Below, one piece after another: positions 22,353-64,000 of a DNA stretch of 64,000 nt. A model generated the notes under the pieces. It was not told where the DNA came from. It did not search any database and worked only from the letters and a program-made list of their open reading frames with translations. Source of the DNA: Octopus sinensis (Eukaryota); NCBI RefSeq assembly GCF_006345805.1, contig NC_043011.1, positions 51,162,464 to 51,226,463 on the forward strand, written 5' to 3'. The position numbers and the translations under genes are program-made. The first letter of the stretch is position 1, and each line of letters opens with the position of its first letter.

Positions 22353-22538
22353 GAATGGGTCATGGACTACTATGTTTCAGAAGGAGCACCAAAGGAAAAA
22401 TTAAATGTGGGTTTGGCCACATATGGAAGAGGTTTCACTTTATCCGATGCTACAAATTCTAAACCTGGAGCTCCATCAAGTGGACCATCACCTCCTGGCA
22501 AATATACTGGAGAGGATGGATTTTTGGCTTATTATGAA
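22353..22538 (+). CDS. GH18 chitinase exon (EWVMDYYVSEGAPKEKLNVGLATYGRGF...FLAYYE)
   Basis: gcatag acceptor; GAPKEKL..G..TYGR and GxYTGEDGFLAYYE motifs; donor GAA|GTAAGA; phase 0/0. Confidence 0.96.
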
Positions 22539-24370: not shown

Positions 24371-24487
24371 ATTTGTACAATGAAGACAGAAAGCGACTAT
24401 CACTGGATGGATCAAGCTAAAGTACCCTACATCGTCAAAGGCGGAACTTGGGTTGGTTATGACAATGTCGAGAGTTTGAAACTAAAG
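24371..24487 (+). CDS. GH18 chitinase exon (ICTMK...WVGYDNVESLKLK)
   Basis: ttttcag acceptor; completes YYE|IC; VPY...WVGYD motif; donor AAG|GTAAGA; phase 0/0. Confidence 0.96.
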
Positions 24488-28385: not shown

Positions 28386-28510
28386 GTAGAATGGCTGAAA
28401 ACCAAAGGATTTGGTGGATTAGCTGTTTGGACCATCTGCTTGGATGATTTCAACAATATTTGTCAAGGCGGAAAATATCCTCTCATGAAAGCAATTAATC
28501 AAGAACTTGG
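28386..28510 (+). CDS. GH18 chitinase, last catalytic-domain exon (VEWLKTKGFGGLAVWTICLDDF...NQELG)
   Basis: ttacag acceptor; GxGG..VW..LDDF..C..GKYPL motif; donor GG|GTATGT; phase 0 to 2. Not in the ORF track. Confidence 0.95.
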
Positions 28511-43226: not shown

Positions 43227-43243
43227 GTCATCTTCATCAACAG
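43227..43243 (+). CDS. 17-nt chitinase micro-exon (G-SSSST-G junction)
   Basis: tatttcttttcttcatttatgcAG|GTCATCTTCATCAACAG|GTGAGA. Phase 2 in and phase 1 out, which bridges exon 28386-28510 to the linker exons. Confidence 0.8.
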
Positions 43244-43493: not shown

Positions 43494-43575
<82 letters not shown>

Positions 43576-44287: not shown

Positions 44288-44357
<70 letters not shown>

Positions 44358-44375
44358 ATATAATATATATATATA

Positions 44376-45021
<646 letters not shown>

Positions 45022-45027
<6 letters not shown>

Positions 45028-46001: not shown

Positions 46002-46053
<52 letters not shown>

Positions 46054-46361
46054 ACACAAACACAGACACACACAGACACAGACACACACAGACACACACA
46101 CACACACACACACACAGACACACACAGACACAGACACACGCACACACACACACACACAGACACAGACACACACACACACACACACACACACACTCAAGAA
46201 CAATGCTCAATGCACAAAAGCATACATTATAAATATAAAAACATAAATTATAAAGATTTCTTTTATTCAAATAAAAATTTAGAAATTTAGAAATTCCTAT
46301 GGAGTTGCCGTGTTGTGTCCTTCATGGGGAGAAAATTAACTTGATATACATTTCATTTCAG

Positions 46362-46424
46362 GTGCGCCGGATGTCGTAACCTCTGAACCTCCAGCTCAGA
46401 CACAGACACCAACACCAGGAGACG
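46362..46424 (+). CDS. Linker exon L1 (GAPDVVTSEPPAQTQTPTPGD)
   Basis: tttcatttcAG acceptor, G|GTAAGA donor, 63 nt, phase 1/1, Pro/Thr-rich. Confidence 0.88.
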
Positions 46425-47141
46425 GTAAGACTGGAACTTGCAGATCTTTTATGAACGACATTGTTTTAATTCATGTATTCATTTAGTTTATATTGCAATT
46501 TATTGTTTCCAGTTTAGGTATAAGGCTAGCACTTTAGACACAAACGAACTAGTTAATTACATTGGCCCTATTACTAAACTGTGTTTTATTTTATTGACCC
46601 TGGTGTCGGAGGGAAAACAAAGTTGACCTTAGTTTTTGCACTGACATCTGATGACTCTCATCTGACCTTTAGTCTAGATACTCCCACTTACCCATATATA
46701 AATGCAGGGCAGCTGTGTATCTTGTCTACGACAAGACACCTGCTTCTCCCTGGCATAAAAATCTCATCTCCTCCTTCTCAAACATCACCACCACTCAGTC
46801 AAGAAGGCCTTTCGCTTCTCTCCTGTTTTTCTATCTTTTTTTGTCCTTTCCTGTCTTTCAAGTTACTGGGTAACCCCACTAGTGCTGGTGGAATGAAAAC
46901 AAACATCAGGTGTACACGGTAAAGTGGTTGATATTATGAAGGGTATCCGGTTGTAAAAATCATGCTAAAGCTGACATAGAATGCGATGCAATTCTGTGGC
47001 TCACTGGATCCGACCAAACCACCCAACTCATATCTCTGTTAGTGATATATGTACATACATACATACGTATGTACATATATACATATGTGTGTACACTCAC
47101 ACACTCACATATACACATGTATTCTTTCTTTCACTATTTAG

Positions 47142-47323
47142 GGGCGTCGTCTAGTACCAGTTGTGTGGGTAAGGCACCAGGAAGCTATGCAATCCCAGGA
47201 GACTGCAAAAACTATATGGTATGCTCCAATGGAAATAAACAAATACTTCCCTGTCCTCCTGGAACGTCTTTCAGCACAGCCATTAAAAACTGTGACTTCT
47301 CTACAGAAGTGCCCGGATGTTGA
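47142..47323 (+). CDS. Terminal exon C1: CBM14 / peritrophin-A chitin-binding domain
   Basis: tttAG acceptor, phase 1. CVGKAPGSYAIPGDCKNYMVCSNGNKQILPCPPGTSFSTAIKNCDFSTEVPGC* has six Cys in CBM14 spacing. The path from exon 11669 through L1 is 1364 nt + 1 = 455 codons including the stop. Confidence 0.93.
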
Positions 47324-47388
47324 AGTTTCTTTGCTATTAAGATACTAAATGAAAAGAAAAAAATTACCGAAACTGAATTTAATTGAAA

Positions 47389-47414
47389 AATAAAGAAAAT
47401 TGCTAAGAAATAAA
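47389..47414 (+). terminator. Poly(A) signals for C1
   Basis: AATAAA at 47389 and 47409 followed by a T/GT-rich tract. Confidence 0.65.
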
Positions 47415-47575
47415 ATGTCTTTTTTTTTGTTGTTTTTCAATCTTTATTATTTATTTATTTATTTTGTGAAAGGACCATTTTAAATATTCCAGTATGGTTC
47501 AAGCAAGACTCATGATAGTGTACTCTTCGGTTCTATAAGATCTTGCTGCTGTTGTGACACCACTTCTGAAATATT

Positions 47576-47792
47576 GATTTCAAATTTAGGCACAAGGTCA
47601 GCAATTTTGGAAGAGGGGGTATGTTGATTATATCAACCCTCAAAACCCAACTGGTGCTTCTTTATTGACCCCCACAAAAGGATGAAAAGCAAAGTCGACT
47701 TCAGCGGAATTTGAACTCAGAGTGTGAAGAAGAATGAAATGCCACTAAGAATTTTGCCCAACATGCTAATAATTCTGCCAGCTTGCCACCTT
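47576..47792 (-). mobile_element. SINE with 16-bp target-site duplication CCACTTCTGAAATATT
   Basis: TSD at 47560-47575 and 47793-47808; also present after C2 and C4, absent after C3. Confidence 0.8.
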
Positions 47793-48767
47793 CCACTTCT
47801 GAAATATTAATTTATAATATGGGCATATGGCCACATATTTGATATATATTACCTTTTCTACCACTACTACAACAGTCTCTGTTCTTTACCTCTAGCTTCT
47901 TCCTCCACCTCCATCTCCTCTCTCTATCTTTTCCCTCTTACAGTTTGACCACTTCTACGATAGTCACTGTTTCTCACATCTACTCAATTTACACACCACC
48001 TCCATTTCATCTCTCTCTGTCTCCTCACTCCTACTATTTGTGTCACTACTAGAACAGTCTCCATTGCTCACATCTACCCAGTTAGATACCACCTCCATCT
48101 CATACCTCTTTCCTTTCACTGTTATATTTTCTACCCTTCTACAATGGTTGCTGTTGCTCAAATCTACCTTTTTACATACCACCTCCACCTCATCCCTCTG
48201 TATCCTTTTCTAAACATTTTGGTCAGTTCTGCTCTAGGGCTATAGCCCTTCTGAAATTCTCTCTCATGCCAAATTCTGCTAATATCTCAGTGAAGTAGAA
48301 GAGTTGTTTGAGCATCAAATAAAATGCTTTGTAACATTCATTCCAGCATCTTACACTTTGTGTTTGAACCCCACCAAGATCAGGCATGGCCTTAATTTTT
48401 CCAGAGTCGATAAACATAATATCAGTTTAAGGCAGTGAACTGGTAAAAGAAATGTCAGAATGGGACTTGGTGTGTAGTTGTGTCTTGTGATATTTGTTCA
48501 GACCTGCTCTGAGTTCAAATTGCTTGTTGGTCTACCTTGGCAGTAGACTAAATCTATCATACGACTGTACAATCTATGGTATTGGTATATAAACATCATA
48601 TATATATATAGTATTCCAATAGGTTTTCACCAGTCAAAAAATACATTTCAATCAATCATGCCCAATGATTGACAATTTACATTTCTGCAGTTGAAAGGTT
48701 CTTCAGCATAAAACTGTTTTGTAACATGAATTGGCTGTTATGAGACTTAATTATCTCTCTCTCTATA

Positions 48768-48904
<137 letters not shown>

Positions 48905-48917
48905 GTCTGTCTGTCTA

Positions 48918-48966
<49 letters not shown>

Positions 48967-49234
48967 ATATGTATATATATATTGCAGATAAGGTTATAAT
49001 CCAAAGTGTGTTCTCTTGAAGCTCATCTGCTTATTCAGTTGCTCATATTTGTTTGAGGTGGGGTATGCATGGAGTATATTTTATTGCAGAATAATTACAT
49101 ATCAAAACAAGAGATTGGAAAAGAGTTTTGGTATTAATTATTCACATATTTCATTTGCTAATAGGAGTTACAAGATTATACATGCAGGAGAAACATGTAC
49201 ACACACACACACACACCCTCAAACACACACACAG

Positions 49235-49266
<32 letters not shown>

Positions 49267-49303
49267 GAACAATGCTCAATGCACAAAAGCATACATTATA
49301 AAT

Positions 49304-49582
49304 CATCATCATCATTGTTTAACATCCGCTTTCCATGCTAGCATGGGTTGGACGGTTCAACTGGGGTCTGGGAAGCCAGTCAGATCTGGCAGTGTTTCTA
49401 CAGCTGGATGCCCTTCCTAAAGCCAACCACTCCGTGAGTGTAGTGGGTGCTTTTTATGTACCACTGACACAGGTGCCAGACGAGGCTGGCGAACGGTCAC
49501 GCTCAGATGGTGTTTTTTTGTGCCCGCGACACAGGTGCCAGACGAGGCTGGCGAACGGTCACGCTCGGGTGGTGTTTTTTAC
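49304..49582 (-). mobile_element. RTE 3' tail inserted only in the second repeat unit
   Basis: Reverse complement of the RTE tail seen at 26400-26700; it interrupts CATTATAAATATAAAAAC, which is intact in the other units. Confidence 0.8.
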
Positions 49583-49715
49583 ATATAAATATAAAAACAT
49601 AAATTATAAAGTTTCTTTTGTTCCAAAAAAAATTATAAATTTAACGATTCCTTTAGAGTTTCCGTGTTGTGTCCTTCATGGGGAGAAAATTAACTTGATA
49701 TACTTTTCATTTCAG

Positions 49716-49778
49716 GTGTGCCGGATGTCGTAACCTCTGAACCTCCAGCTCAGACACAGACACCAACACCAGGAGACG
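49716..49778 (+). CDS. Linker exon L2 (GVPDVVTSEPPAQTQTPTPGD)
   Basis: Same splice sites as L1; one Ala-to-Val change. Confidence 0.8.
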
Positions 49779-50493
49779 GTAAGACTGGAACTTGCAGATC
49801 TTTTATGAACGACATTGTTTTAATTCATGTATTCATTTAGTTTATATTGCAATTTATTGTTTCCAGTTTAGGTATAAGGCTAACACTTTAGACACAAACG
49901 AACTAGTTAATTACATTGGCCCTAATAGTAAACTGTGTTTTATTTTATTGACCCTTGTGTGGGAGGGAAAAGAAAGTTGACCTCAGTTTTTGCCCTGGCA
50001 TCTGATCACTCTCTCCTGACCTTTAGTCTAGATACTCCCACATATCCATATATAAATGCAGGGCAGCTGTGTATCTTGTCTACGACAAGACACCTGCTTC
50101 TCCCTGGCATAAAAATCTCATCTCCTCCTTCTCAAACATCACCACCACTCAGTCAAGAAGGCCTTTCGCTTCTCTCCTGTTTTTCTATCTTTTTTTGTCC
50201 TTTCCTGTCTTTCAAGTTACTGGGTAACCCCACTAGTGCTGGTGGAATGAAAACAAACATCAGGTGTACACGGTAAAGTGGTTGATATTATGAAGGGTAT
50301 CCGGTTGTAAAAATCATGCTAAAGCTGACATAGAATGCGATGCAATTCTGTGGCTCACTGGATCCGACCAAACCACCCAACTCATATCTCTGTTAGTGAT
50401 ATATGTACATACATACGTATGTATATATATATACATATGTGTGTACACTCACACACTCACATATACACATGTATTCTTTCTTTCACTATTTAG

Positions 50494-50675
50494 GGGCGTC
50501 GTCTAGTACCAGTTGTGTGGGTAAGGCACCAGGAAGCTATGCAATCCCAGGAGACTGCAAAAACTATATGGTATGCTCCAATGGAAATAAACAAATACTT
50601 CCCTGTCCTCCTGGAACGTCTTTCAGCACAGCCATTAAAGACTGTGACTTCTCTACAGAAGTGCCCGGATGTTGA
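50494..50675 (+). CDS. Terminal exon C2: CBM14
   Basis: Intact acceptor, six Cys, TGA. Differs from C1 by one nt (AAC>GAC, N>D). AATAAA at 50741 and 50761. Confidence 0.82.
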
Positions 50676-51944
50676 AGTTTCTTTGCTATTAAGATACTAA
50701 ATGAAAAGAAAAAAATTACCGAAACTGAATTTAATTGAAAAATAAAGAAAATTGCTAAGAAATAAAATGTCTTTTTTTTTGTTGTTTTTCAATCTTTATT
50801 ATTTATTTATTTATTTTGTGAAAGGACCTTTTAAATATTCCAGTATGGTTCAAGCAAGACTCATGATAGTGTACTCTTCGGTTCTATAAGATCTTGCTGC
50901 TGTTGTGACACCACTTCTGAAATATTGATTTCAAATTTAGGCACAAGGTCAGCAATTTTGGAAGAGGGGGTATGTTGATTATATCAACCCTCAAAACCCA
51001 ACTGGTGCTTCTTTATTGACCCCCCACAAAAGGATGAAAAGCAAAGTCGACTTCAGCGGAATTTGAACTCAGAGTGTGAAGAAGAATGAAATGCCACTAA
51101 GAATTTTGCCCAACATGCTAATAATTCTGCCAGCTTGCCACCTTCCACTTCTGAAATATTAATTTATAATATGGGCATATGGCCACATATTTGATATATA
51201 TTACCTTTTCTACCACTACTACAACAGTCTCTGTTCTTTACCTCTAGCTTCTTCCTCCACCTCCATCTCCTCTCTCTATCTTTTCCCTCTTACAGTTTGA
51301 CCACTTCTACGATAGTCACTGTTTCTCACATCTACTCAATTTACACACCACCTCCATTTCATCTCTCTCTGTCTCCTCACTCCTACTATTTGTGTTACTA
51401 CTAGAACAGTCTCCATTGCTCACATCTACCCAGTTAGATACCACCTCCATCTCATACCTCTTTCCTTTCACTGTTATATTTTCTACCCTTCTACAATGGT
51501 TGCTGTTGCTCAAAGCTACCTTTTTACATACCACCTCCACCTCATCCCTCTGTATCCTTTTCTAAACATTTTGGTCAGTTCTGCTCTAGGGCTATAGCCC
51601 TTCTGAAATTCTCTCTCATGCCAATTCTGCTAATATCTCAGTGAAGTAGAAGAGTTGTTTGAGCATCAAATAAAATGCTTTGTAACATTCATTCCAGCAT
51701 CTTACACTTTGTGTTTGAACCCCACCAAGATCAGGCATGGCCTTAATTTTTCCAGAGTCGATAAACATAATATCAGTTTAAGGCAGTGAACTGGTAAAAG
51801 AAATGTCAGAATGGGACTTGGTGTGTAGTTGTGTCTTGTGATATTTGTTCAAACCTGCTCTGAGTTCAAATTGCTTGTTGGTCTACCTTGGCAGTAGACT
51901 AAATCTATCATAAAACTGTACAATCTATGGTATTGGTATTTAAA

Positions 51945-52030
<86 letters not shown>

Positions 52031-52036
52031 CATATA

Positions 52037-52073
<37 letters not shown>

Positions 52074-52170
52074 TTTCCAATATGTTTTCACCATTCAAAA
52101 GATACCTTTCCATCAATCATGCCCAATGATTGACAATTAACATTTCTGCAATTGGCAGTTATGAGACTTA

Positions 52171-52345
<175 letters not shown>

Positions 52346-52661
52346 GTCTGTCTGTCTGTCTATACATGTGTGTGTGTGCATATGTATATATATATATATA
52401 TATATGTGTATATAAATATATATATTGCAGATAAGGTTATAATCCAAAGTGTGTTCTCTTGAAGCACATCTGCTTATTCTGGTACTCATATTTGTTTGAG
52501 GTGAGGTATGCATGGAGTATATTTTATTGCAGAATAATTACATATCAAAACAAGAGATTGGAAAATAGTTTTGGTATTAATTATTCACATATTTCATTTG
52601 CTAATAGGAGTAACAAGAGAATACATGCAGGAGAAACATGTACACACACACACACACACAC

Positions 52662-52733
<72 letters not shown>

Positions 52734-52892
52734 AAGACCAATGCTCAATGCACAAAAGCATACATTATAAATATAAAAACATAAATTATAAAGTTTCTTG
52801 TATTCAAATAAAGATTATAAATTTAACGATTAGAGTTGCTGTGTTGTGTCCTTCATGCGGAGAAAATTAACTTGATATACTTTTCATTTCAG

Positions 52893-52955
52893 GTGCGCCG
52901 GATGTCGTAACCCCTGAACCTCCAGCTCAGACACAGTCACCGACACCAGGAGACG
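52893..52955 (+). CDS. Linker exon L3 (GAPDVVTPEPPAQTQSPTPGD)
   Basis: tttcatttcAG...G|GTAAGA, 63 nt, open frame. Confidence 0.8.
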
Positions 52956-53789
52956 GTAAGACATATACATATAATTTGCTGGCTTGAAAATGCTTTGTGT
53001 ACAGACATGCACTCATACACACATATGCATGAACCCGTACATGCATACATGCACACACACACACACATGCACACAGTTGACTACTTACTGTAGGCACTAA
53101 TGTATGTATGTATGTATGTTTATGTGTGTGTGTCTGTGTGTATGTGTGTCTATGTGTGCCTGTGCATGGACATGTGTGCGTGTATATATTTGTCTTTGTG
53201 AGTTATGTTTCCTTTGCAAATTTCAAGCCAGTCACTTATAGAAGGCAAGGCTCTTTTGTTTAAGTCAAGACAGCTTTTGGAGATTTTATTTACCTGAACT
53301 GGTTGATATATACATATATCTGTATGTTTATGTATGTGTATATATTGTGCGTATGCGTGTGTACAGATATTAAACGGTCATGCATCTCACATTAGCATGC
53401 AGATGGGCATGTTTTGTAACTGCTTATATGTCTGCATCCATTTGTATTTGATAAATATATGAGATTGTGAGCATATGCATGCATGAAATTGTATGTGTGT
53501 GTGTATATATATATATATAAAAACCAGCTTAGAGAAGAAGAAGAAACGAAACGAAACCAAACGAATCGAATCGAATCAACGCGAAGGCGTTCACTCATAC
53601 AATAGTGTAATAAATAAAATATATGCATACATACAAACATATATGTGCGTACCTACATCTACATGTATATATACATGCCTATATAAATATATATATATGT
53701 GTGTACAGGACACCACAAATAGACGTACACACACACACACACACACATATATGTATAATGTATTTATTTACATGCAAATTTATATACGT

Positions 53790-54030
53790 AGAGGCACATG
53801 GCTTAGTGGCTAGGGTGTCAGCATCATGATCGTAAGATTGTGGTTTTGATTCCTAGACTGGGCGACACGTTGTGTTCTTGAGCAAAACACTTCATTTCAC
53901 ATTGCTTCAATCCACTCAGCTGGCAAAAATGAGTAATGCTGCGATGGACTGGCGTCCCGTCCAGCTGAGGAATACATACGCCATTGAAACTGGGAAACCA
54001 GGCCCATGAGCCTGGCTAGGCTTTAGAAAG
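53790..54030 (+). mobile_element. tRNA-derived SINE (third family); duplicate at ~60350-60590
   Basis: GGCACATGGCTTAGTGGCTAGGG...GGTTT[T/C]GATTCC head resembling A and B boxes. Confidence 0.7.
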
Positions 54031-54128
54031 TGAAAATACTTTCACACTTCCAATTTCAACCATTATGTTGCATTATGAGAATGATGATGTTTCAATAACG
54101 AAAGTAATGTTTCGCCGAATTAGTCATA

Positions 54129-55810
54129 TCTATACTATAATAAAGAAAGCTGCTTATCATCTGTAATGTGATAATGTTATAATATTGTTTCACTTTCATT
54201 CTTTCACTTTTAGTTCTAATGTGATAACATTAAGATCATCTTATTTCTATTATATTTGAAATGAATGAATAATTTACATCTTAATGTGAAGAACATTACA
54301 CATCAGCAACTTTCTTTCTTTATGGCCCCACAGTAGAGTGGTGTGTCAGTGTATGTGTTGACTGACATAACGAATGGCTGCAGGTGAAACTCTTGACAAA
54401 AAGCAATGAGGTGGCCGGTGTAAGGTATATAAAAATACACATTTACCATTCAGCTACCAGTTAATAATTATCGCAGCAGTTGCAGGGTTTCAACTTAATT
54501 ACATTTACATATTTACCCTTAAATTAGCATTTAATACATGTGCTTAATATATATATATATATATTAAGAAATTTATCTATAATTATTATTGTGGCATTTA
54601 CCGTTAAATTAGCAGTTCATAAATGTGCTTCTATTTGGTTAAAATATACTGCATACAAAAATAAAAATATACTACATACATACAACTGCTTACAAAAATA
54701 TGGATTAATGTATAGTTTTTTTTCTATGTTCATAATTCTTTGTTTACAATTTTGAAAAAAATATGCCACCAAAGAAAAGACATAATCTCTCCAGAAACAA
54801 GTATAAAGCAAAGAGGATCGTAGAAAACCAAAGACGAGAGTCTGAAGAGAGAAACAAGAGGAGATTTTCTCAAGATCAGCAAACGCATACTGCAGCATGT
54901 CAGACAGAGTCTCAGGAGAAAAGGGAGATAAGACTTTCCCAATATCAGCAAATGCATGCTGCAGCACTTAATGCTGGATCATTAAATCAATGTTTTAATG
55001 ATTAGACAGAGGTCCAATAGAATAGCTCTCAGAAACAAACTATTTTGGAATTTGTTCTTCACAACTCCTGAAGCTGCTTTCATATATGATCCATCCCATT
55101 CTTATAAAATCGATAACTCTGCTCTGTCCAAATTGGTGTGCTAAACACCAATCATCGTTTCTGTAGAGCTTTAAAATTTTTTCAAATGAAATAAATGACA
55201 TGTGCTGCTCAGGTGGCCAGGTAAGATTGCCAGGACTATCAGTTCCTTCTCAACCTCTTATGGATCTTCTAAAAGGCACTTCCATCCAGTCAAAGGATTT
55301 TCTGATCAATATCAGACAATACAACTCTGCATTTCAAATTACAAATTACATACTGTTTACTGCATCTAAGAAGATAGTTAAACATGAATTTACGCCAACA
55401 TCCAAGTTCAAGGGCAAGTCTATCACCTCATTGGCTCCCTGTTACCCACAAATGAACAACCACAGTTGCTCCAAATTTGCTTAATGAGTGATGTAGGACA
55501 ACAAACTTGAAGGTGTGAAAATTAGACACAACGCCGACTGCTGCAAAAGAGAGTATATTCACTGACAGATTTTAGGTGTGTTCAAAAATCACATAACCTC
55601 CACCCCCAATTTTCCATGACAAGTCAGGGCCCGAAATATTCTAAACGGATGCATAGCATGTTGCTTAGTCGAATTAGCCCATCATTTACTCCACAAATGT
55701 TTTGTTGTCAATGCTGCACTTTCCCATATCGCCTGTTTCAATGTAACTGTAATATATTATATACAAACTATGCCATTTTAATCACAAGCAACGCCAGGTA
55801 TCTCTATTAG
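54129..55810 (+). mobile_element. Internally deleted Helitron in the L3-C3 intron
   Basis: 5' A|TCTATACTA. Rep N-terminal remnant MCCSGGQVRLP..P..L.DLL.G...SKDFLINIRQYNSAFQ. The 3' end CAAGCAACGCCAGGTATCTCTATTAG aligns with the termini at 32715 and 38963. Confidence 0.8.
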
Positions 55811-55873
55811 CGATATATGTATGTACACTCACACACTCACATATACACATGTATTCTTTCTTTCACCATTTAG

Positions 55874-56055
55874 GGGCGTCGTCTAGTGCCAGTTGTGTGG
55901 GTAAGGCACCAGGAGGCCATGCAATCCCAGGAGACTGCAAAAACTATATAGTATGCTCTAATGGAATAATACATATACTTCCCTGTCCTCCGGGAACTTC
56001 TTTCAGCGAGGCCATTAAAGTCTGTGACTACTCTTCGAAAGTGCCCGGATGTTGA
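55874..56055 (+). CDS. Terminal exon C3: CBM14 variant
   Basis: CVGKAPGGHAIPGDCKNYIVCSNGIIHILPCPPGTSFSEAIKVCDYSSKVPGC*; intact acceptor and six Cys; AATAAA at 56353 and 56373. Confidence 0.85.
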
Positions 56056-56120
56056 AGTTTGTTTGCTATTAAGATACTAAATGAAAAGAAAAAATTAACG
56101 AAACTGAATGTAACTGAATT

Positions 56121-56340
56121 GTTGGAGCACTGCACCCTTCAAAACTTCCATGCTTCCTGAGATTTGCCAACACTACACCTGATTTTCCCCCCTCCATACA
56201 CACGCAAGCATGGATCTGACTCAAACACTGTTCGCTTTCCAGACATTTGTACATCACTGCATATGCTTTATACACACTTTTGACAAGTTGTGGTGCACCT
56301 GAGCACTGTATACAATAATTTCATTATTATTATTATATTA
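56121..56340 (+). mobile_element. Retroposed 3' fragment with (TTA)n tail in the C3 3' UTR; duplicate at ~62669-62893
   Basis: Ends GCACCTGAGCACTGTATACAATAA-TTTCATTATT, matching the minus-strand repeat end at ~42590-42625; absent after C1 and C2. Confidence 0.7.
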
Positions 56341-57483
56341 TTGTAATTGAAAAATAAACAAAATTGTTAAGAAATAAAATGTCTTTTTTTTGTTGTTTTT
56401 CAATCTTTATTTATTTTGTGAGAGGACCTTTTAAATATTCCAGTATGGTTCAAGCAAGACTCATGATAGTGTACTCTTCAGTTCTATAAGATCTTGCTGC
56501 TGCTGTGACACCACTTCTGAAATATTGATTTATAATATGGGCATATGGCCACATATTTGATATATATTACCTTTTCTACCACTACCACAACAGTCTCTGT
56601 TCTTTACCTCTAGCTTCTTCCTCCACCTCCATCTCTTCTCTCTATCTTTTCCCTCTTACAGTTTGACCACTTCTACGATAGTCACTGTTTCTCACATCTA
56701 CTCAATTTACACACCACCTCCATTTCATCTCTCTCTGTCTCCTCACTCCTACTATTTGTGTCACTACTAGAACGGTCTCCATAGCTCACATCTACCCAGT
56801 TAGATACCACCTCCATCTCATACCTCTTTCTTTTCACTGTTATATTTTTTACCTTTCTACAATGGCTGCTGTTGCTCAAATCTACCTATTTACATACCAC
56901 CTCCACCTCATCCCTCTGTATCCTTTTCTAAACATTTTGGTCAGTTCTGCTCTAGGGCTATAGCCCTTCTGAAATTCTCTCTCATCCCAAATCCTGCTAA
57001 TATCTCAGTGAAGAAGAAGAGTTGTTTGGGCATCAAATAAAATGCTTTGTAACATTCATTCCAGCATCTTACACTTTGTGTTTGAACCCCACCAAGATCA
57101 GGCATGACCTTAATTTTTCCAGAGTCGATAAACATAATATCAGTTGAAGGCAGTGAACTGGTAAAAGAAATGTCAGAATGGGACTTGGTGTGTAGTTGTG
57201 TCTTGTGATATTTGTTCAAACCTGCTCTGAGTTCAATTTGCTTGTTGGTCTACCTTGGCAGTAGACTAAATCTATCATATGACTGTACAATCTATGGTAT
57301 TGGTATATAAACATCATATATATATATATATAGTATTCCAATAGGTTCTCACCAGTCAAAAAATACATTTCAATCAATCATGCCCAATGATTGACAATTT
57401 ACATTTCTGCACTTAAAAGGTTCTTCAGCATGAAACTGTTTTGTAAGATAAGTTGGCTGTTATGAGACTTAATTATCTCTCTC

Positions 57484-57518
<35 letters not shown>

Positions 57519-57524
57519 ATCTAT

Positions 57525-57610
<86 letters not shown>

Positions 57611-57623
57611 GTCTGTCTGTCTA

Positions 57624-57670
<47 letters not shown>

Positions 57671-58087
57671 ATATGTATATATATATATATATTGCAGATA
57701 AGGTTATAATCCAAAGTGTGTTCTCTTGAAGCTCATCTGCTTATTCAGTTGCTCATATTTGTTTGAGGTGGGGTCTGCGTGGAGTATATTTTATTGCAGA
57801 ATAATAATTACATATCAAAACAAGAGATTGGAAAAGAGTTTTGGTATTAATTATTCACATATTTCATTTGCTAATATGGGATGCAATATTATACATGCAG
57901 GAGAAACATGTACACACACACACAAAAACAATGCTCAATACACAAAAGCATACATTATAAATATAATAACATAAATTATAAAGTTTCTTGTATTCAAATA
58001 AAAATTATAAATTTAACGATTCCTTTAGAGTTGCCATGTTGTGTCTTTCATGGGGAGAAAATTACCTTGATATACTCTTCATTTCAG

Positions 58088-58150
58088 GTGCGCCGGATGT
58101 TGTAACCCCTGAATCTCCAGCTCAGACAGAGACACAGAAACCAGGAGACG
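58088..58150 (+). CDS. Linker exon L4 (GAPDVVTPESPAQTETQKPGD), no CBM exon before L5
   Basis: atttcAG...G|GTAAGA, 63 nt, open frame; the most diverged linker copy. Confidence 0.78.
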
Positions 58151-58958
58151 GTAAGACTGGAACATGCAGATCGTTTATGAATGACATTGTTTTAAATCAT
58201 GTATTCATTCAGTTTATATTGCAATTTATTGTTTCCAGTTTAGGTATAAGGCTAGCACTTTAGACACAAACGAACTAGTTAATTACATTGGCCCTATTAC
58301 TAAACTGTGTTTTATTTTATTGACCCTGATGTCGGAGGGAAAAGAAAGTAGACCTCAGTTTTTGCACTGGCATCTGATCACTCTCATCTGACCTTTAGTC
58401 TAGATACTCTCACTTACCCATATATAAGTGCAGGGCAGCTGGGTATCTTGTTTATGACAAGACACCTGCTTCTCCCTGACATAAAAATGGCATCTCCTCC
58501 TTCTCAAATACCACCACTACTCAGTCAAGAAGGCCTTTGTCTTTTCTGCTATTTTTTTTGTCTTTTCTTGTCCTTTCCTGTTTTTCAAGTTACTGGGTAA
58601 CCCCACTAGTGCTGGTGGAATGAAAACAAGCATCCAGTGTACACTGTAAAGTGGTTGACATTAGGAAGGGCATCCAGCTGTAAAAATTATGCTAAAGCTG
58701 ACATAGAATGCGATGCAATTCTGTGGCTCACCGGATCCTACCAAACCACCCAACTCATGCCAGCTTGGAAAAGAGATGCTTAATGATGATGGTGATTATG
58801 ATGATGATGAATGTTAAAAGTCAGCAAAAATACCTCAAGTAATTTTTCCATTACACATAGGATTTCGTGGATTTGTTACTTTCAGTTTATATAATGCAAT
58901 TTATAAGCAACAGAGTGGTTGGTTCCAAGATTCCAAAAGAGTTCAGCAGTTCAGTGTG

Positions 58959-59006
<48 letters not shown>

Positions 59007-59243
59007 CTGATTGGGTTATAATCCAAAGTGTGTTCTCTTGAAGCACATCTGCTTATACTTGTACACATATTTGTTTGAGGTGAGGTATGCATGGAGTATA
59101 TTTTATTGCAGAATAATAATTACATATCAAAACAAGAGATTGGAAAATAGTTTTGGTATTAATTATTCACATATTTCATTTGCTAATAGGAGTAACAAGA
59201 GAATACATGCAGGAGAAACATGTACACACACACACACACACAC

Positions 59244-59299
<56 letters not shown>

Positions 59300-59456
59300 A
59301 AGACCAATGCTCAATGCACAAAAGCATACATTATAAATAAAAACATAAATTATAAAGTTTCTTGTATTCAAATAAAAATTATAAATTTAACGATTAGATT
59401 TGCCGTGTTGTGACTTTCATGCGGAGAAAATTAACTTGATATACTCTTCATTTCAG

Positions 59457-59519
59457 GTGCGCCGGATGTCGTAACCCCTGAACCTCCAGCTCAGACACAG
59501 TCACCGACACCAGGAGACG
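59457..59519 (+). CDS. Linker exon L5 (identical to L3)
   Basis: Same 63-nt sequence and splice sites as L3. Confidence 0.8.
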
Positions 59520-60688
59520 GTAAGACATATAAATATAATTTGCTGGCTTGAAAATGCTTTGTGTACAGACATGCACTCATACACACATATGCATGAACCC
59601 GTACATGCATACATGCACACACACACACACATGCACACAGTTGACTACTTACTGTAGGCACTAATGTATGTATGTATGTATGTTTATGTGTGTGTGTCTG
59701 TGTGTATGTGTGTCTATGTGTGCCTGTGCATGGACATGTGTGCATGTATATATTTGTCTTTGTGAGTTATGTTTCCTTTGCAAATTTCAAGCCAGTCACT
59801 TATAGAAGGCAAGGCTCTTTTGTTTAAGTCAAGACAGCTTTTGGAGATTTTATTTACCTGAACTGGTTGATATATACATATATCTGTATGTTTATGTATG
59901 TGTATATATTGTGCGTATGCGTGTGTACAGATATTAAACGGTCATGCATCTCACATTAGCATGCAGATGGGCATGTTTTGTAACTGCTTATATGTCTGCA
60001 TCCATTTGTATTTGATAAATATATGAGATTGTGAGAATATGTATGCATGAAATTGTATGTGTGTGTGTATATATATATATATAAAAACCAGCTTAGAGAA
60101 GAAGAAGAAACGAAACGAAACCAAACGAATTGAATCGAATCGACGCGAAGGCGTTCACTCATACAATAGTGTAATAAATAAAATATATGCATACATACAA
60201 ACATATATGTGCGTACCTACATCTACATGTATATATACATGCCTATATAAATATATATACGTGTGTACAGGACACCACAAATAGACGTACACACACACAC
60301 ACACACATATATGTATAATGTATTTATTTACATGCAAATTTATATGCGTAGAGGCACGTGGCTTAGTGGCTAGGGTGTTAGCATCATGATCGTAAGATTG
60401 TGGTTTCGATTCCTAGACTGGGCGACACGTTGTGTTCTTGAGCAAAACACTTCATTTCACATTGCTCCAATCCACTCAGCTGGCAAAAATGAGTAATGCT
60501 GCGATGGACTGGCGTCCCGTCCAGCTGAGGAATACATATGCCATTGAAACTGGGAAACCAGGCCCATGAGCCTGGCTAGGCTTTAGAAAGTGAAAATACT
60601 TTCACACTTCCAATTTCAACCATTATGTTGCATTATGAGAATGATGATGTTTCAATAACGAAAGTAATGTTTCGCCGAATTAGTCATA

Positions 60689-62358
60689 TCTATACTATAA
60701 TAAAGAAAGCTGCTTATCATCTGTAATGTGATAATGTTATAATATTGTTTCACTTTCATTCTTTCACTTTTAGTTCTAATGTGATAACATTAAGATCATC
60801 TTATTTCTATTATATTTGAAATGAATGAATAATTTACATCTTAATGTGAAGAACATTACACATCAGCAACTTTCTTTCTTTATGGCCCCACAGTAGAGTG
60901 GTGTGTCAGTGTATGTGTGACTGACATAACGAATGGCTGCAGGTGAAACTCTTGACAAAAAGCAATGAGGTGGCCGGTGTAAGGTATATAAAAATACACA
61001 TTTACCATTCAGCTACCAGTTAATAATTATCGCAGCAGCAGTTGCAGGGTTTCAACTTAATTACATTTACATATTTACCCTTAAATTAGCATTTAATACA
61101 TGTGCTTAATATATATATATATATATATATTAAGAAATTATCTATAATTATTATTGTGGCATTTACCGTTAAATTAGCAGTTCATAAATGTGCTTCTATT
61201 TGGTTAAAATATACTGCATACAAAAATAAAAATATTACATACATACAACTGCTTACAAAAATATGGATTAATGTATAGTTTTTTTTCTATGTTCATAATT
61301 CTTTGTTTACAATTTTGAAAAAAATATGCCACCAAAGAAAAGACATAATCTCTCCAGAAACAAGTATAAAGCAAAGAGGATCGTAGAAAACCAAAGGCGA
61401 GAGTCTGAAGAGAGAAACAAGAGGAGATTTTCTCAAGATCAGCAAACGCATACTGCAGCCTGTCAGACAGAGTCTCAGGAGAAAAGGGAGATAAGACTTT
61501 CCCAATATCAGCAAATGCATGCTGCAGCACTTAATGCTGGATCATTAAATCAATGTTTTAATGATTAGACAGAGGTCCAATAGAATAGCTCTCAGAAACA
61601 AACTATTTTGGAATTCGTTCTTCACAACTCCTGAAGCTGCTTTCATATATGATCCATCCCATTCTTATAAAATCGATAACTCTGTCCAAATTGGTGTGCT
61701 AAACACCAATCATCGTTTCTGTAGAGCTTTAAAATTTTTTCAAATGAAATAAATGACATGTGCTGCTCAGGTGGCCAGGTAAGATTGCCAGGACTATCAG
61801 TTCCTTCTCAACCTCTTATGGATCTTCTAAAAGGCACTTCCATCCAGTCAAAGGATTTTCTGATCAATATCAGACAATACAACTCTGCATTTCAAATTAC
61901 ATCGTTTACTGCATCTAAGAAGATAGTTAAACATGAATTTACGCCAACATCCAAGTTCAAGGGCAAGTCTATCACCTCATTGGCTCCCTGTTACCCACAA
62001 ATGAACAACCACAGTTGCTCCAAATTTGCTTTATGAGTGATGTAGGACAACAAACCTGAAGGTGTGAAAATTAGACACAACGCCGACTGCTGCAAAAGAG
62101 AGTATATTCACTGACAGATTTTAGGTGTGTTCAAAAATCACATAACCTCCACCCCCAATTTTCCATGACAAGTCAGGGCCCGAAATATTCTAAACGGATG
62201 CATAGCATGTTGCTTAGTCGAATTAGCCCATCATTACTCCACAAATGTTTTGTTGTCAATGTTGCACTTTCCCATATCGCCTGTTTCAATGTAACTGTAA
62301 TATATTATATACAAACTATGCCATTTTAATCACAAGCAACGCCAGGTATCTCTGTTAG
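60689..62358 (+). mobile_element. Second copy of the intronic Helitron (L5-C4 intron)
   Basis: Duplicate of 54129-55810 (offset 6560); ends CAAGCAACGCCAGGTATCTCTGTTAG. Confidence 0.8.
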
Positions 62359-62421
62359 CGATATATGTATGTACACTCACACACTCACATATACACATGT
62401 ATTCTTTCTTTCACCATTTAG

Positions 62422-62603
62422 GGGCGTCGTCTAGTGCCAGTTGTGTGGGTAAGGCACCAGGAGGCCATGCAATCCCAGGAGACTGCAAAAACTATATGGT
62501 ATGCTCTAATGGAATAAAATTTATATTTCCCTGTCCTCCGGGAACTTCTTTCAACGAGGCCATTAAAGTCTGTGACTACTCTTCGAAAGTGCCCGGATGT
62601 TGA
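62422..62603 (+). CDS. Terminal exon C4: CBM14 variant
   Basis: CVGKAPGGHAIPGDCKNYMVCSNGIKFIFPCPPGTSFNEAIKVCDYSSKVPGC*; intact acceptor and six Cys; AATAAA at 62906 and 62926. Confidence 0.85.
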
Positions 62604-64000
62604 AGTTTGTTTGCTATTAAGATACTAAATGAAAAGAAAAAATTAACGAAACTGAATGTAACTGAATTGTTGGAGCACTGCACTGCACCCTTCAAAACTT
62701 CCATGCTTCCTGAGATTTGCCAACACTACACCTGATTTTCCCCCCTCCATACACACGCAAGCATGGATCTGACTCAAACACTGTTCGCTTTCCAGACATT
62801 TGTACATCACTGCATATGCTTTATACGCACTTTTGACAAGTTGTGGTGCACCTGAGCACTGTATACAATAATTTCATTATTATTATTATATTATTGTAAT
62901 TGAAAAATAAACAAAATTGTTAAGAAATAAAATGTGTTTTTTTTGTTGTTTTTCAATCTTTATTATTTATTTATTTATTTTGTGAAAGGACCTTTTAAAT
63001 ATTCCAGTTTGGTTCAAGCAAGACTCATGATAGTGTACTCTTTGGTTCTATAAGATCTTGCTGCTGTTGTGACACCACTTCTGAAATATTGATTTCAAAT
63101 TTAGGCACAAGGCCAGCAATTTTGTAAGAGGGGGTATGTTGATTATATCAACCCTCAAAAGCCATCTGGTGCTTACTTTATTGACCCCAAAAGATGAAAA
63201 GCAAAGTCGACTTCAGCAGAATTTGAACTCAGAGTGTGAAGATGGATGAAATGCCACTAAGAAGTTTGCCCAACATGCTAATAATTCTGCCAGCTTGCCA
63301 CCTTCCACTTCTGAAATATTAATTTATAATATGGGCATATGGCCACATATTTGATATATATTACCTTTTCTACCACTACCACAACAGTCTCTGTTCTTTA
63401 CCTCTAGCTTCTTCCTCCACCTCCATCTCCTCTCTCTATCTTTTCCCTCTTACAGTTTGACCACTTCTACGATAGTCACTGTTTCTCACATCTACTCAAT
63501 TTACACACCACCTCCATTTCATCTCTCTCTGTCTCCTCACTCCTACTATTTGTGTCACTACTAGAACAGTCTCCATAGCTCACATCTACCCAGTTAGATA
63601 CCACCTCCATCTCATACCTCTTTCCTTTCACTTTTATATTTTCTACCCTTCTACAATGGTTGCTGTTGCTCACATCTACCTATTTACATACCACCTCCAC
63701 CTCATCCCTCTGTATCCTTTTCTAAACATCTTGGTCAGTTCTGCTCTAGGGCTATAGCCCTTCTGAAATTCTCTCTCATCCCAAGTCTTGCTAATATCTC
63801 AGTGAAGTAGAAGAGTTGTTTGAGCATCAAATAAAATGCTTTGTAACATTCATTCCAGCATCTTACACTTTGTGTTTGAACCCCACCAAGATCAGGCATG
63901 GCCTTAATTTTTCCAGAGTCGATAAACATAATATCAGTTGAAGGCAGTGAACTGGTAAAAGAAATGTTAGAATGGGACTTGGTGTGTAGTTGTGTCTTGT

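What the first reader, a model, noticed from the sequence alone, without database searches (positions are those of the whole stretch)
46362..64000. One GH18 catalytic domain followed by a cassette array of interchangeable linker exons and alternative CBM14 terminal exons
Seen: only the last two exons of the chitinase are tandemly multiplied (L1-C1-L2-C2-L3-C3-L4-L5-C4, repeat still running at the window end); the catalytic exons are single-copy within the window. Every L is 63 nt, phase 1/1, with AG and GTAAGA sites intact. Every C has an intact acceptor, six Cys, its own TGA and two AATAAA. The micro-exon ends in phase 1, so any subset of upstream L exons can join any C in frame: 2+4+8+32=46 possible exon paths, fewer distinct proteins because L3=L5. 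Established: GH18-linker-CBM14 is the standard animal chitinase layout. Inference: alternative last-exon choice plus cassette linkers could tune both chitin-binding specificity and tether length from one gene, a Dscam-like modular design that I do not recognise for chitinases.
Basis: partly seen in the sequence, partly recalled or inferred. Interest (0 to 1): 0.9.

Follow-up and report, generated by a model that had tools for sequence, protein, structure and literature searches.

The report
Octopus chitinase gene, repeated tail exons
In Octopus sinensis the last two exons of a saliva-type chitinase gene (a linker and a chitin-binding domain) have been copied in tandem several times, so one gene could make enzymes with different tails; the array is real, but NCBI already annotates seven such isoforms, and whether the extra tails are used is still unproven.

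Summary
The window is Octopus sinensis chr C15. It holds one GH18 chitinase gene (7 catalytic exons and a 17-nt micro-exon) followed by L1-C1-L2-C2-L3-C3-L4-L5-C4. All 5 L exons are 63 nt, phase 1/1, with identical splice sites. All 4 C exons are CBM14 domains with six Cys, a TGA and two AATAAA. All 46 exon paths are in frame and give 42 distinct proteins.

The array stops at C4 and does not run on. A convergent GH18 gene follows about 4 kb downstream.

It is not an assembly artefact. An independent O. vulgaris assembly and an O. sinensis haplotig carry the same tandem layout with shared position-specific variants. O. bimaculoides has one L and one C.

The units evolve by unequal crossover and gene conversion, with signs of birth and death: a truncated unit, a mosaic C2 allele, and a stop codon in the O. 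vulgaris C3 orthologue.

RefSeq already lists seven isoforms (X1-X7) that match seven of the 46 paths exactly. The only cloned cDNA is L-C1. I could reach no transcript reads.

Best reading: a young, duplication-born set of alternative last exons plus cassette linker exons (lola-like rather than Dscam-like), with the proximal path dominant. Functional tuning is unproven.

The parts
11672..11855 (+). GH18 coding exon A (second coding exon; NAGNAG acceptor at 11669/11672). The signal-peptide exon lies about 0.9 kb upstream of the window.
   Evidence: tblastn and splice-site reading. Matches RefSeq isoforms 100%. Exon 1 is in L020 at 9089-9142.
15389..15626 (+). GH18 exon B with the catalytic motif FDGLDIDWEYP
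19024..19148 (+). GH18 exon C
20804..20927 (+). GH18 exon D
22353..22538 (+). GH18 exon E
24371..24487 (+). GH18 exon F
28386..28510 (+). GH18 exon G (last catalytic exon, ends in phase 2)
43227..43243 (+). Constitutive 17-nt micro-exon (encodes SSSST; enters in phase 2, leaves in phase 1)
   Evidence: Pattern search. Conserved in O. vulgaris and O. bimaculoides. Present in all RefSeq isoforms and in the cDNA.
46362..46424 (+). L1, 63-nt Pro/Thr-rich linker exon, phase 1/1
47142..47323 (+). C1, CBM14 terminal exon coding part including TGA. AATAAA at 47389 and 47409.
   Evidence: The AF2 model matches the CHIT1 CBM14. Its amino-acid sequence equals the C-terminus of cDNA BAX02570.
49716..49778 (+). 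L2 (1 nt different from L1: Ala to Val)
50494..50675 (+). C2 (1 nt different from C1: Asn to Asp). AATAAA at 50741 and 50761.
52893..52955 (+). L3 (identical to L5)
55874..56055 (+). C3, diverged CBM14 (80% amino-acid identity to C1). AATAAA at 56353 and 56373.
58088..58150 (+). L4, the most diverged L, in a truncated unit (57912-58758) that has no C exon
59457..59519 (+). L5
62422..62603 (+). C4, the last CBM14 terminal exon (6 non-synonymous and 0 synonymous differences from C3). AATAAA at 62906 and 62926.
46223..51964 (+). Type-A units U1 and U2 (98.1% identical; L-to-C intron about 0.72 kb)
52383..64000 (+). Type-B units U3 and U5 (97.1% identical; L-to-C intron about 2.9 kb, with the flanks that resemble the single O. 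bimaculoides unit), and truncated U4 between them. Homology ends 72 nt past the window.
43494..43571 (+). (TG)n tract about 250 nt downstream of the micro-exon. Complementary to the (CA)n tracts upstream of L1 (45998-46198), L2 (49193-49267), L3 (52636-52736) and L5 (59218-59302). Role unknown.

Best explanation
This is the 3' end of the Octopus sinensis saliva-type chitinase gene (RefSeq 'acidic mammalian chitinase': GH18 catalytic domain, Pro/Thr-rich linker, CBM14).

Origin (shown by comparison). In the O. vulgaris/O. sinensis lineage, after the split from O. bimaculoides, the ancestral unit was tandemly amplified by unequal crossing-over. That unit is a 63-nt linker exon, an intron, a CBM14 terminal exon, a 3'UTR and poly(A) signals. 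The result here is five linker exons and four terminal exons. The units keep exchanging sequence by gene conversion and differ between haplotypes.

Consequence of the sequence (shown). Every copy kept the same splice sites, the same phase (1/1), an open frame and its poly(A) signals. The gene therefore offers alternative last exons plus additive cassette linker exons.

Expected usage (inferred). Most transcripts should take the proximal path micro-exon, L1, C1 and end at the C1 poly(A) site, because that acceptor and cleavage site are transcribed first and are as strong as the later ones. When the C1 acceptor and poly(A) site are skipped, L exons concatenate, giving 21 extra residues each, and a downstream CBM14 is used. 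These would be minority isoforms with longer tethers and variant chitin-binding modules.

Biological value (unproven). The sequence evolution fits a young, largely neutral birth-and-death array better than a maintained specificity switch.
For: Anatomy: searches give the exons, phases, splice sites, stops and poly(A) signals. All 46 paths are in frame.

Domains: GH18 (317 bits) and CBM_14 (46.6-50.8 bits against a cut-off of 22.1) for tails with C1, C2, C3 and C4. The catalytic motif DGLDIDWE is present. The AF2 model of C1 (pLDDT 84) superposes on the human CHIT1 CBM14 (TM 0.72-0.73, rmsd 0.9-1.0 A).

Identity of the locus: G000 has 13,516 contigs and 2.719 Gb, which equals ASM634580v1 (PMC10700109). 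RefSeq O. sinensis isoforms X1-X7 equal seven conceptual paths exactly.

The duplication is real:
- The O. vulgaris Nanopore-read assembly shows L-C-L-C-L-L-C in the same place.
- Nine variant columns just upstream of the L exon are shared by position (Os_U2 = Hap_U2 = Ov_Ub, against U1 and Ua).
- Haplotig C1182 carries U1 and U2 in tandem.

Lineage-specific: O. bimaculoides has one L and one C with no assembly gap, then the same convergent GH18 neighbour.

Gene conversion and mosaicism: column patterns. The haplotig C2' has a 5' half like C3 and a 3' half like C2. The 3' flanks are 96-98% alike between unit types, while the C exons differ by 11%.

Proximal path: the cloned cDNA BAX02570 has one L followed by a tail identical to C1.

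Context: an enzyme of this kind was purified from octopus posterior salivary gland, and chitinases are regular saliva components (PMC4728518; PMC7693380).
Against: I could reach no transcript reads. A search of the 5.8-billion-protein collection with the C-terminal 101 aa found no transcriptome-derived fragments. None of the six protein accessions searched (five RefSeq isoforms and the cDNA) appears in the paper library. Use of C2, C3, C4 and of L-to-L junctions therefore rests only on RefSeq predicted models, whose evidence I cannot inspect.

Reads from the mosaic C2' allele would map best to C3 (1 mismatch against 4 in the first 60 nt). That could create the L1/L2-to-C3 models artificially.

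Signs that the downstream copies are dispensable:
- The O. vulgaris C3 orthologue has TCG changed to TAG six codons before the end, and a 57-nt partial duplicate upstream.
- U4 has lost its C exon.
- dN/dS between C types is 0.71-0.78, against 0.28-0.33 for the O. sinensis C exons (0.28-0.38 for all copies) compared with the O. bimaculoides orthologue.

The near-identity of U3 and U5 (97.1%) is not confirmed by a second assembly. The O. vulgaris locus I could fetch ends before that point.
Confidence: 0.65

Rival explanations
1. The downstream units (from L2 or C2 onward) are transcriptionally silent partial gene duplicates. The gene makes only micro-exon, L1, C1. The extra RefSeq isoforms are artefacts of mapping short reads, or reads from other alleles, onto near-identical repeats.
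For: The only cloned cDNA is a single L plus C1. The C1 acceptor and poly(A) signals come first and are as good as the later ones. The mosaic C2' allele could mimic L2-to-C3 junctions. There is a stop codon in O. vulgaris Cc and a truncated U4, and dN/dS is about 0.75 between C types. No transcript fragments were found.
Against: RefSeq models include L|L junctions and a micro-exon|L3/5 junction (X1, X2, X4, X5). Reads from a single-L transcript cannot produce these. All five L and four C copies in O. sinensis, and all L copies in O. vulgaris, keep their splice sites, frame and Cys codons. With about 20 substitutions between C1 and C3 or C4, I estimate roughly a 6% chance of this under neutrality. 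The O. vulgaris gene model ends inside the second L exon and not the first.
Confidence: 0.25
2. The array, or its near-identical pairs C1/C2 and C3/C4, is an assembly artefact in which two haplotypes were laid side by side.
For: U1 and U2 are 98.1% alike and U3 and U5 are 97.1% alike. An unplaced haplotig (C1182) exists and is itself oddly joined.
Against: The independent O. vulgaris assembly has L-C-L-C-L-L-C. Position-specific variants are shared across species. The haplotig itself contains U1 and U2 in tandem. Only the U3/U5 pair lacks independent confirmation.
Confidence: 0.03
3. The array is a regulated selector system. The (UG)n tract just downstream of the constitutive micro-exon base-pairs with one of the (CA)n tracts that precede the L exons (or these tracts recruit CA-repeat-binding proteins). 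This brings a chosen L acceptor next to the micro-exon donor and so chooses tether length and CBM14 in a tissue-specific way, formally like the Dscam exon-6 docking site and selectors.
For: A (TG)n tract lies at 43494-43571. (CA)n tracts lie 155-165 nt before L1, L3 and L5 and about 450 nt before L2. O. vulgaris has the same layout, and O. bimaculoides has a CA tract before its single L. Such tracts are sparse outside the array: 4 TG and 10 CA in 62.5 kb. RefSeq X5 joins the micro-exon directly to L3 or L5.
Against: This was noticed post hoc in a microsatellite-rich genome. The CA tract is simply part of the duplicated unit. Each spacer also has its own local (TG)n that could pair instead. L4 lacks a CA tract. 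There is no covariation to test and no expression data.
Confidence: 0.05
4. The C exons are internal exons. A donor just before the stop (GGAT|GTTGAA) splices C to the next L and restores the sixth Cys (T+GT). The product would be one long protein with several CBM14 domains.
For: The phase fits. T|GT... joined to an L exon gives TGT (Cys) and keeps the frame (read from the sequence).
Against: GTTGAA matches the donor consensus only at GT. No RefSeq isoform or cDNA uses it. Each C is followed by paired AATAAA signals.
Confidence: 0.02

Closest known systems
Arrays of alternative 3'-terminal exons behind constant 5' exons (Drosophila lola, mod(mdg4), Broad-Complex); from my own knowledge
   Same: Shared N-terminal exons encode a constant domain. 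They are followed by a tandem series of alternative terminal exons, each encoding a variant of one small binding domain with its own stop and poly(A) site. The series arose by tandem duplication.
   Different: Here there are only four terminal exons. They are very young (98% to about 89% alike), lineage-specific and polymorphic. The variable module is an extracellular carbohydrate-binding domain, not a zinc finger. Extra in-frame linker cassettes sit between the terminal exons. Use of the alternatives is not yet demonstrated.
Dscam1-type clusters of mutually exclusive cassette exons; from my own knowledge
   Same: Tandemly duplicated exons of equal length and phase sit in one gene. Complementary (UG)n and (CA)n tracts lie in positions that recall a docking site and selectors.
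   Different: The C exons are terminal, not internal. The L exons are additive in the RefSeq models (up to five in a row), not mutually exclusive. No conserved docking or selector pairing is shown.
Alternative splicing of animal chitinases that alters the chitin-binding domain, for example Lutzomyia longipalpis LlChit1 A/B/C (PMC5722264)
   Same: One GH18 gene yields products that differ at the C-terminal chitin-binding part.
   Different: In LlChit1 the variants interrupt translation of the chitin-binding domain with stop codons. Here the alternatives would swap one intact CBM14 for another and lengthen the linker.
Orthologous single-unit gene of Octopus bimaculoides (XP_014781237, GH18, micro-exon, one L, one C) and the cloned O. 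'vulgaris' (Japan) chitinase cDNA BAX02570
   Same: Same gene and same exon structure, micro-exon, linker motif and CBM14. Same convergent GH18-only neighbour.
   Different: O. bimaculoides has only one L and one C. The cDNA has a 23-residue L allele not present in this assembly.
Exon duplication as a source of alternative splicing in general (Kondrashov and Koonin 2001; Letunic et al. 2002; from my own knowledge)
   Same: Tandem duplicates keep length, phase and splice sites, and so become substitutable or additive exons.
   Different: Most catalogued cases are internal exons. Here the duplicated block contains the terminal exon with its poly(A) site.

Membership tests
GH18 chitinase (catalytically competent, animal type) | Pfam Glyco_hydro_18 domain above the gathering score | tested here: met
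   317 bits against a cut-off of 29.6, residues 23-365, for every isoform tested
GH18 chitinase (catalytically competent, animal type) | Catalytic DxxDxDxE motif | tested here: met
   FDGLDIDWEYP encoded in exon B (motif hit begins at 15555)
GH18 chitinase (catalytically competent, animal type) | Chitinolytic activity of the product | not testable with these tools
   A chitinase was purified from octopus posterior salivary gland (Ogino et al. 2014, cited in PMC4728518). Its identity with this gene product is not shown here.
CBM14 (peritrophin-A chitin-binding module) | Pfam CBM_14 above the gathering score, with six conserved Cys | tested here: met
   46.6-50.8 bits against a cut-off of 22.1 for tails with C1, C2, C3 and C4. 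Six Cys in every copy.
CBM14 (peritrophin-A chitin-binding module) | CBM14 fold | tested here: met
   The AF2 model of C1 (pLDDT 84.3) matches CHIT1 5hbf (TMq 0.72-0.73, rmsd 0.9-1.0 A), 6so0 and tachycitin 1dqc. Only C1 was modelled.
Alternative-last-exon gene (lola or mod(mdg4)-like layout) | Several terminal exons downstream of shared exons, each with an acceptor, an in-frame stop and poly(A) signals | tested here: met
Alternative-last-exon gene (lola or mod(mdg4)-like layout) | Mature transcripts that end in different terminal exons | tested here: inconclusive
   Seven RefSeq predicted isoforms use C1, C2, C3 and C4, but their read support is not visible to me. The cDNA covers C1 only. No transcript fragments were found.
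Dscam-like mutually exclusive exon cluster | Exactly one exon of the cluster is included per transcript | tested here: not met
   RefSeq models concatenate 2, 4 or 5 L exons (X1-X4). The C exons exclude one another only because each ends the transcript.
Dscam-like mutually exclusive exon cluster | Docking site and selector RNA pairing | tested here: inconclusive
   Complementary (TG)n and (CA)n microsatellites lie in suggestive positions. No covariation or functional evidence.

The most novel reading that the evidence does not exclude
The array is a working, regulated selector. Pairing between the single (UG)n tract after the constitutive micro-exon and the (CA)n tracts before the individual L exons, or proteins bound to those tracts, decides which linker and CBM14 unit is spliced in. 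Different tissues (posterior salivary gland, digestive gland, skin) would then secrete chitinases with different tether lengths and chitin-binding modules from one gene. This would be a lineage-specific, microsatellite-based analogue of docking-site and selector splicing, less than a few million years old.
Probability: 0.06. Interest if true: 0.7.

Novelty: new member of a known kind. Interest (0 to 1): 0.35.

Why it matters
If the downstream units are used, this is a very young and still polymorphic example of how tandem duplication of a gene's 3' end creates alternative last exons and a linker of variable length in a secreted enzyme. The ancestral single-unit state is preserved in O. bimaculoides. 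An intermediate state is preserved in O. vulgaris and in a second O. sinensis haplotype. That makes the birth of alternative splicing by duplication directly observable.

It would also give a natural series for testing how tether length and CBM14 variants affect attack on crystalline chitin: GH18 with 1 to 5 linkers and 3 to 4 CBM14 variants.

If the downstream units are silent, it is simply a recent partial duplication, plus a caution about isoform models in tandem repeats.

There are practical annotation points. The O. vulgaris models miss the 17-nt micro-exon and therefore carry a frameshifted tail with no CBM14. The RefSeq cross-unit isoforms may also reflect allelic mosaics.

Tried and rejected
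1. Transcript evidence from public assemblies. The first full-length search returned only genome-derived or cDNA-derived proteins for this gene. A 101-aa C-terminal query returned nothing. Result: no transcript evidence reachable.
2. Search of the paper library for six of the protein accessions (five RefSeq isoforms and the cDNA): none found. Searches on chitinase, alternative splicing, CBM14 and exon duplication found no description of this locus.
3. Extending the O. vulgaris locus downstream through the neighbouring gene. No O. vulgaris orthologue of that gene is in the protein collection. The O. vulgaris array is therefore seen only up to the C3 orthologue.
It was then found by tblastn about 0.9 kb upstream of the window.
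5. C exons as internal exons via a T|GTTGAA donor: considered and rejected because the donor is weak, no model uses it and poly(A) signals follow.
6. Homogeneous 3' flanks explained by a dispersed transposable element: rejected. Only about 220 bp (about 47570-47793) is a dispersed repeat. The rest is unique to this locus and its haplotig.
7. A selection test on the C exons: too few sites to decide. dN/dS is 0.7-0.8 between types. C3 against C4 has 6 non-synonymous and 0 synonymous differences. Orthologous O. sinensis and O. vulgaris pairs show only non-synonymous changes. The catalytic exons of the same gene also give 12 non-synonymous to 2 synonymous differences, so the C exons are not special.
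It served only to locate exons. All exon calls were then checked against RefSeq proteins.

Full report
WHAT IS THERE. The window is Octopus sinensis, contig C15:51162464-51226463. The genome has 13,516 contigs and 2.719 Gb, the figures given for ASM634580v1 in PMC10700109. A tblastn probe and splice-site reading give seven GH18 coding exons on the + strand between 11672 and 28510, including the catalytic FDGLDIDWE motif. A 17-nt micro-exon lies at 43227-43243. The signal-peptide exon lies about 0.9 kb upstream of the window. Downstream lie exactly five copies of a 63-nt linker exon (L1-L5) and four copies of a CBM14 exon (C1-C4), in the order L1-C1-L2-C2-L3-C3-L4-L5-C4.

CHECK OF THE OBSERVATION. 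Every L exon is flanked by ttcatttcag| and |gtaaga. L3 and L5 are identical. Every C exon has its acceptor, six Cys, a TGA right after the last Cys and two AATAAA downstream. The micro-exon ends in phase 1, the L exons are phase 1/1 and the C exons start in phase 1. I spliced all 46 paths in silico. All are open with one terminal stop, and they give 42 distinct proteins. Tails with C1, C2, C3 and C4 all pass the Pfam CBM_14 threshold, next to a 317-bit GH18 domain. An AlphaFold model of C1 (pLDDT 84) superposes on the CBM14 of human chitotriosidase.

Two corrections are needed. First, the array ends with C4. Homology stops 72 nt beyond the window and no L or C copy occurs in the next 20 kb. 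A second, GH18-only chitinase gene lies there on the opposite strand, its 3' end about 4.2 kb from C4. Second, the genome holds no other copies except on the unplaced 36.9-kb contig C1182.

REPEAT ANATOMY. There are two unit types.
- Type A: U1 (46223-48614) and U2 (49580-51964), 98.1% alike, with an L-to-C intron of about 0.72 kb.
- Type B: U3 (52383-56558) and U5 (58960-63122), 97.1% alike, with an L-to-C intron of about 2.9 kb.
- U4 (57912-58758) is a truncated type-A unit that kept L4 but has no C exon.

The sequences flanking the type-B C exons resemble those of the single O. bimaculoides unit. The 3' flanks are 96-98% alike even between types, while the C exons differ by about 11%. Only about 220 bp of the flank is a dispersed repeat, and the rest is unique to this locus. 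The pattern is therefore a mosaic made by exchange between units, not by a transposable element.

IS IT AN ASSEMBLY ARTEFACT? No, at least not for U1 and U2.
- The O. vulgaris genome was assembled independently using Nanopore reads (PMC10700109). It has L-C-L-C-L-L-C at the same place, without gaps.
- In an alignment of the type-A units, nine variable columns just upstream of the L exon follow position and not species: U2 of O. sinensis, U2 of the haplotig and the second O. vulgaris unit agree against the first units. Further 3', the patterns switch, which is the signature of gene conversion.
- Contig C1182 aligns at 98.8% to window 32200-51525 and itself contains L1-C1-L2-C2.
- Its C2 is a mosaic, with a 5' half like C3 and a 3' half like C2, and it resembles the second O. 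vulgaris C.
- After C2, C1182 carries a 57-nt L like the third O. vulgaris L. It then jumps to the 5' part of the gene, a join I could not resolve.
- The U3/U5 pair has no independent confirmation.

AGE. O. bimaculoides has one micro-exon, one L and one C, with no assembly gap between L and the convergent neighbour gene. That is a short-read-based assembly, so a collapse of near-identical copies cannot be excluded, but diverged copies would show. The amplification therefore arose after the split from O. bimaculoides. It arose before the O. sinensis/O. vulgaris split, put at about 2.5 Mya in PMC10700109.

IS THE ARRAY USED? The RefSeq gene 'acidic mammalian chitinase' of O. sinensis has isoforms X1-X7, which equal seven paths exactly:
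- X1: L1-L2-L3-L4-L5-C4
- X2: L1-L3-L4-L5-C4
- X3: L1-L2-C3
- X4: L1-L2-C2
- X5: L3 or L5, then C4
- X6: L1-C1
- X7: L1-C3

These are predicted models and I cannot see their read support. The only cloned cDNA is BAX02570, labelled O. vulgaris and apparently from the Japanese laboratory that purified the salivary-gland chitinase (my inference). PMC10700109 argues that Japanese 'O. vulgaris' is likely O. sinensis. This cDNA has one L, a 23-residue allele, followed by a tail identical to C1. Searches for transcript-derived protein fragments and for the accessions in papers found nothing.

One caution applies. Reads from the mosaic C2' allele match C3 better than the reference C2 near the acceptor (1 mismatch against 4 in 60 nt). 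The models joining L1 or L2 to C3 (X3, X7) could therefore be allelic mapping artefacts. L|L junctions and the micro-exon|L3/5 junction cannot arise that way.

The O. vulgaris gene models miss the micro-exon, which is present with intact splice sites. They therefore end in a frameshifted GCAGCRNL inside the second L exon. That is weak evidence that the second unit is spliced there.

SELECTION.
- C1 against the O. bimaculoides C gives dN/dS 0.28.
- C1 or C2 against C3 or C4 gives 0.71-0.78.
- C3 against C4 shows 6 non-synonymous and 0 synonymous changes.
- Orthologous O. sinensis and O. vulgaris C pairs differ only non-synonymously.
- The catalytic exons show the same trend, with 12 non-synonymous against 2 synonymous changes between the two species. 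The whole gene is evolving fast and the tails are not special.
- The O. vulgaris orthologue of C3 has a stop six codons before the end, which removes the sixth Cys, and a 57-nt partial duplicate upstream.

Together with truncated U4, this looks like birth-and-death turnover. On the other side, all O. sinensis copies keep splice sites, frame and Cys codons. By my rough estimate that has only about a 6% chance over about 20 substitutions if the copies were unconstrained.

MECHANISM, AS FAR AS IT CAN BE INFERRED. All L acceptors and donors are alike, and all C acceptors are nearly alike. The first acceptor and the first poly(A) site transcribed (C1) should therefore win most of the time. Downstream tails need read-through of the C1 poly(A) site and skipping of the C1 acceptor. 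L exons then join head to tail, each adding 21 Pro/Thr-rich residues. This step is inference. The substitutions between C types lie mainly in strand 1 (S15G, Y16H), in the strand-3 hairpin (N32I, K33I, Q34H/F, L36F) and near the C-terminus (N50V, F53Y, E56K), mapped on the model's secondary structure. Position 53 aligns with Trp465 of CHIT1. From memory, that residue is important for chitin binding. Whether any of this changes binding is unknown.

COMPARISON WITH KNOWN SYSTEMS. GH18-linker-CBM14 is the standard animal chitinase layout. Chitinases are regular octopus saliva components (PMC7693380; PMC4728518). Alternative splicing that removes the chitin-binding domain is known in an insect chitinase (PMC5722264). 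Constant 5' exons followed by tandem alternative terminal exons encoding variants of a binding module is the lola or mod(mdg4) design (my own knowledge). It is not the Dscam design: mutual exclusivity is not met for the L exons, and it is trivial for the C exons. I found no paper describing this locus. I rate it a new member of a known kind, already visible in RefSeq.

A LEAD NOTICED ON THE WAY. A (TG)n tract lies 250 nt after the micro-exon, and (CA)n tracts lie 155-165 nt before L1, L3 and L5 and about 450 nt before L2. O. vulgaris has the same layout, and O. bimaculoides has a CA tract before its single L. Such tracts are sparse in the rest of the 84 kb examined. This could in principle act as docking and selector pairing or as CA-repeat splicing elements. 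It is post hoc and untested, and I give it about 6%.

VERDICT. The array is a real, young, polymorphic tandem amplification of the gene's 3' end that creates the potential for alternative tails, which is already annotated. Actual use and function are unproven. Interest 0.35.

Noticed in passing
window 43494-43571; 45998-46198; 49193-49267; 52636-52736; 59218-59302: A (TG)n tract lies about 250 nt downstream of the constitutive micro-exon. Complementary (CA)n tracts lie shortly upstream of L1, L2, L3 and L5 (not L4). O. vulgaris has the same layout, and O. bimaculoides has a CA tract before its single L. This could form long-range RNA pairing or bind CA-repeat factors.
   Followed up: partly
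L019 (O. vulgaris OX597831.1) about 62830 and 68626-68690: The O. vulgaris gene models CAI9735677 and CAI9735678 skip the conserved 17-nt micro-exon (GTTATCTTCATCAACAG, splice sites intact). They therefore end in a frameshifted GCAGCRNL inside the second L exon and lack the CBM14. This is probably an annotation error.
   Followed up: partly
L019 76262-76318 and 76465-76647: The O. vulgaris orthologue of C3 has TCG changed to TAG six codons before the end, which loses the sixth Cys, and a Pro-to-Ser change. It is preceded by a 57-nt partial duplicate of the exon start. This copy seems to be decaying.
   Followed up: partly
G000 contig C1182 (L012-L015), whole 36.9 kb: The haplotig aligns to window 4586-20114 (99.5%) and to 32200-51525 (98.8%), but in an order that does not fit the chromosome. 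The segment ending in L1-C1-L2-C2'-L' (window 32200-51525) is followed by the 5' part of the gene. This is either a mis-join or a haplotype with a further partial gene copy. Its U1 is 100% identical to the main assembly, while its U2 is only 96%. Its L2 acceptor region has a 1-nt shift (cag|GTTGTGCC) that would break the frame, possibly a long-read error.
   Followed up: partly
20 kb downstream of the window (L016, L017; extended coordinates 66818-83098, minus strand): A second GH18 chitinase gene without CBM14 (RefSeq XP_036365601/2, orthologue of O. bimaculoides XP_014781231) lies tail to tail with the array gene. O. bimaculoides has the same arrangement.
   Followed up: partly
window 11672-28510 compared with L019: The catalytic exons differ between O. 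sinensis and O. vulgaris by 12 non-synonymous and 2 synonymous substitutions (dN/dS about 1.7 by Nei-Gojobori). The protein has evolved fast or under little constraint over about 2.5 My.
   Followed up: partly
window 28751-32403 (-), 39739-40632 (+), 36832-37254 (+), 22992-23324 (-), 1958-2734 (-): Transposable-element remains lie in the introns and upstream: two reverse-transcriptase ORFs (RVT_1), a Pif1 2B helicase fragment (possibly Helitron-derived, my inference), a mariner-type transposase fragment and a weak (sub-threshold) zf-RVT match. The 14.7-kb intron before the micro-exon is mostly such material.
   Followed up: partly
window about 47570-47793 and the matching place in each unit: A dispersed repeat of about 220 bp (SINE-like, about 80% identical to many copies on other chromosomes) sits in the 3' flank of each C exon.
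   Followed up: partly
window 11653-11672: An in-frame ATG (MSTITAAYRR...) lies just upstream of the exon A acceptor. RefSeq used it as the start of the partial model XP_029653829 on the haplotig, which gives a protein without a signal peptide. The acceptor itself is a NAGNAG (cag|cag).
   Followed up: no
L exons in window, C1182 and L019: L exons occur in lengths of 57, 63 and 69 nt, and the cDNA has a 69-nt allele. The length changes come from slippage of the CAGACA/ACACCA hexamer repeat and always stay in frame.
   Followed up: partly
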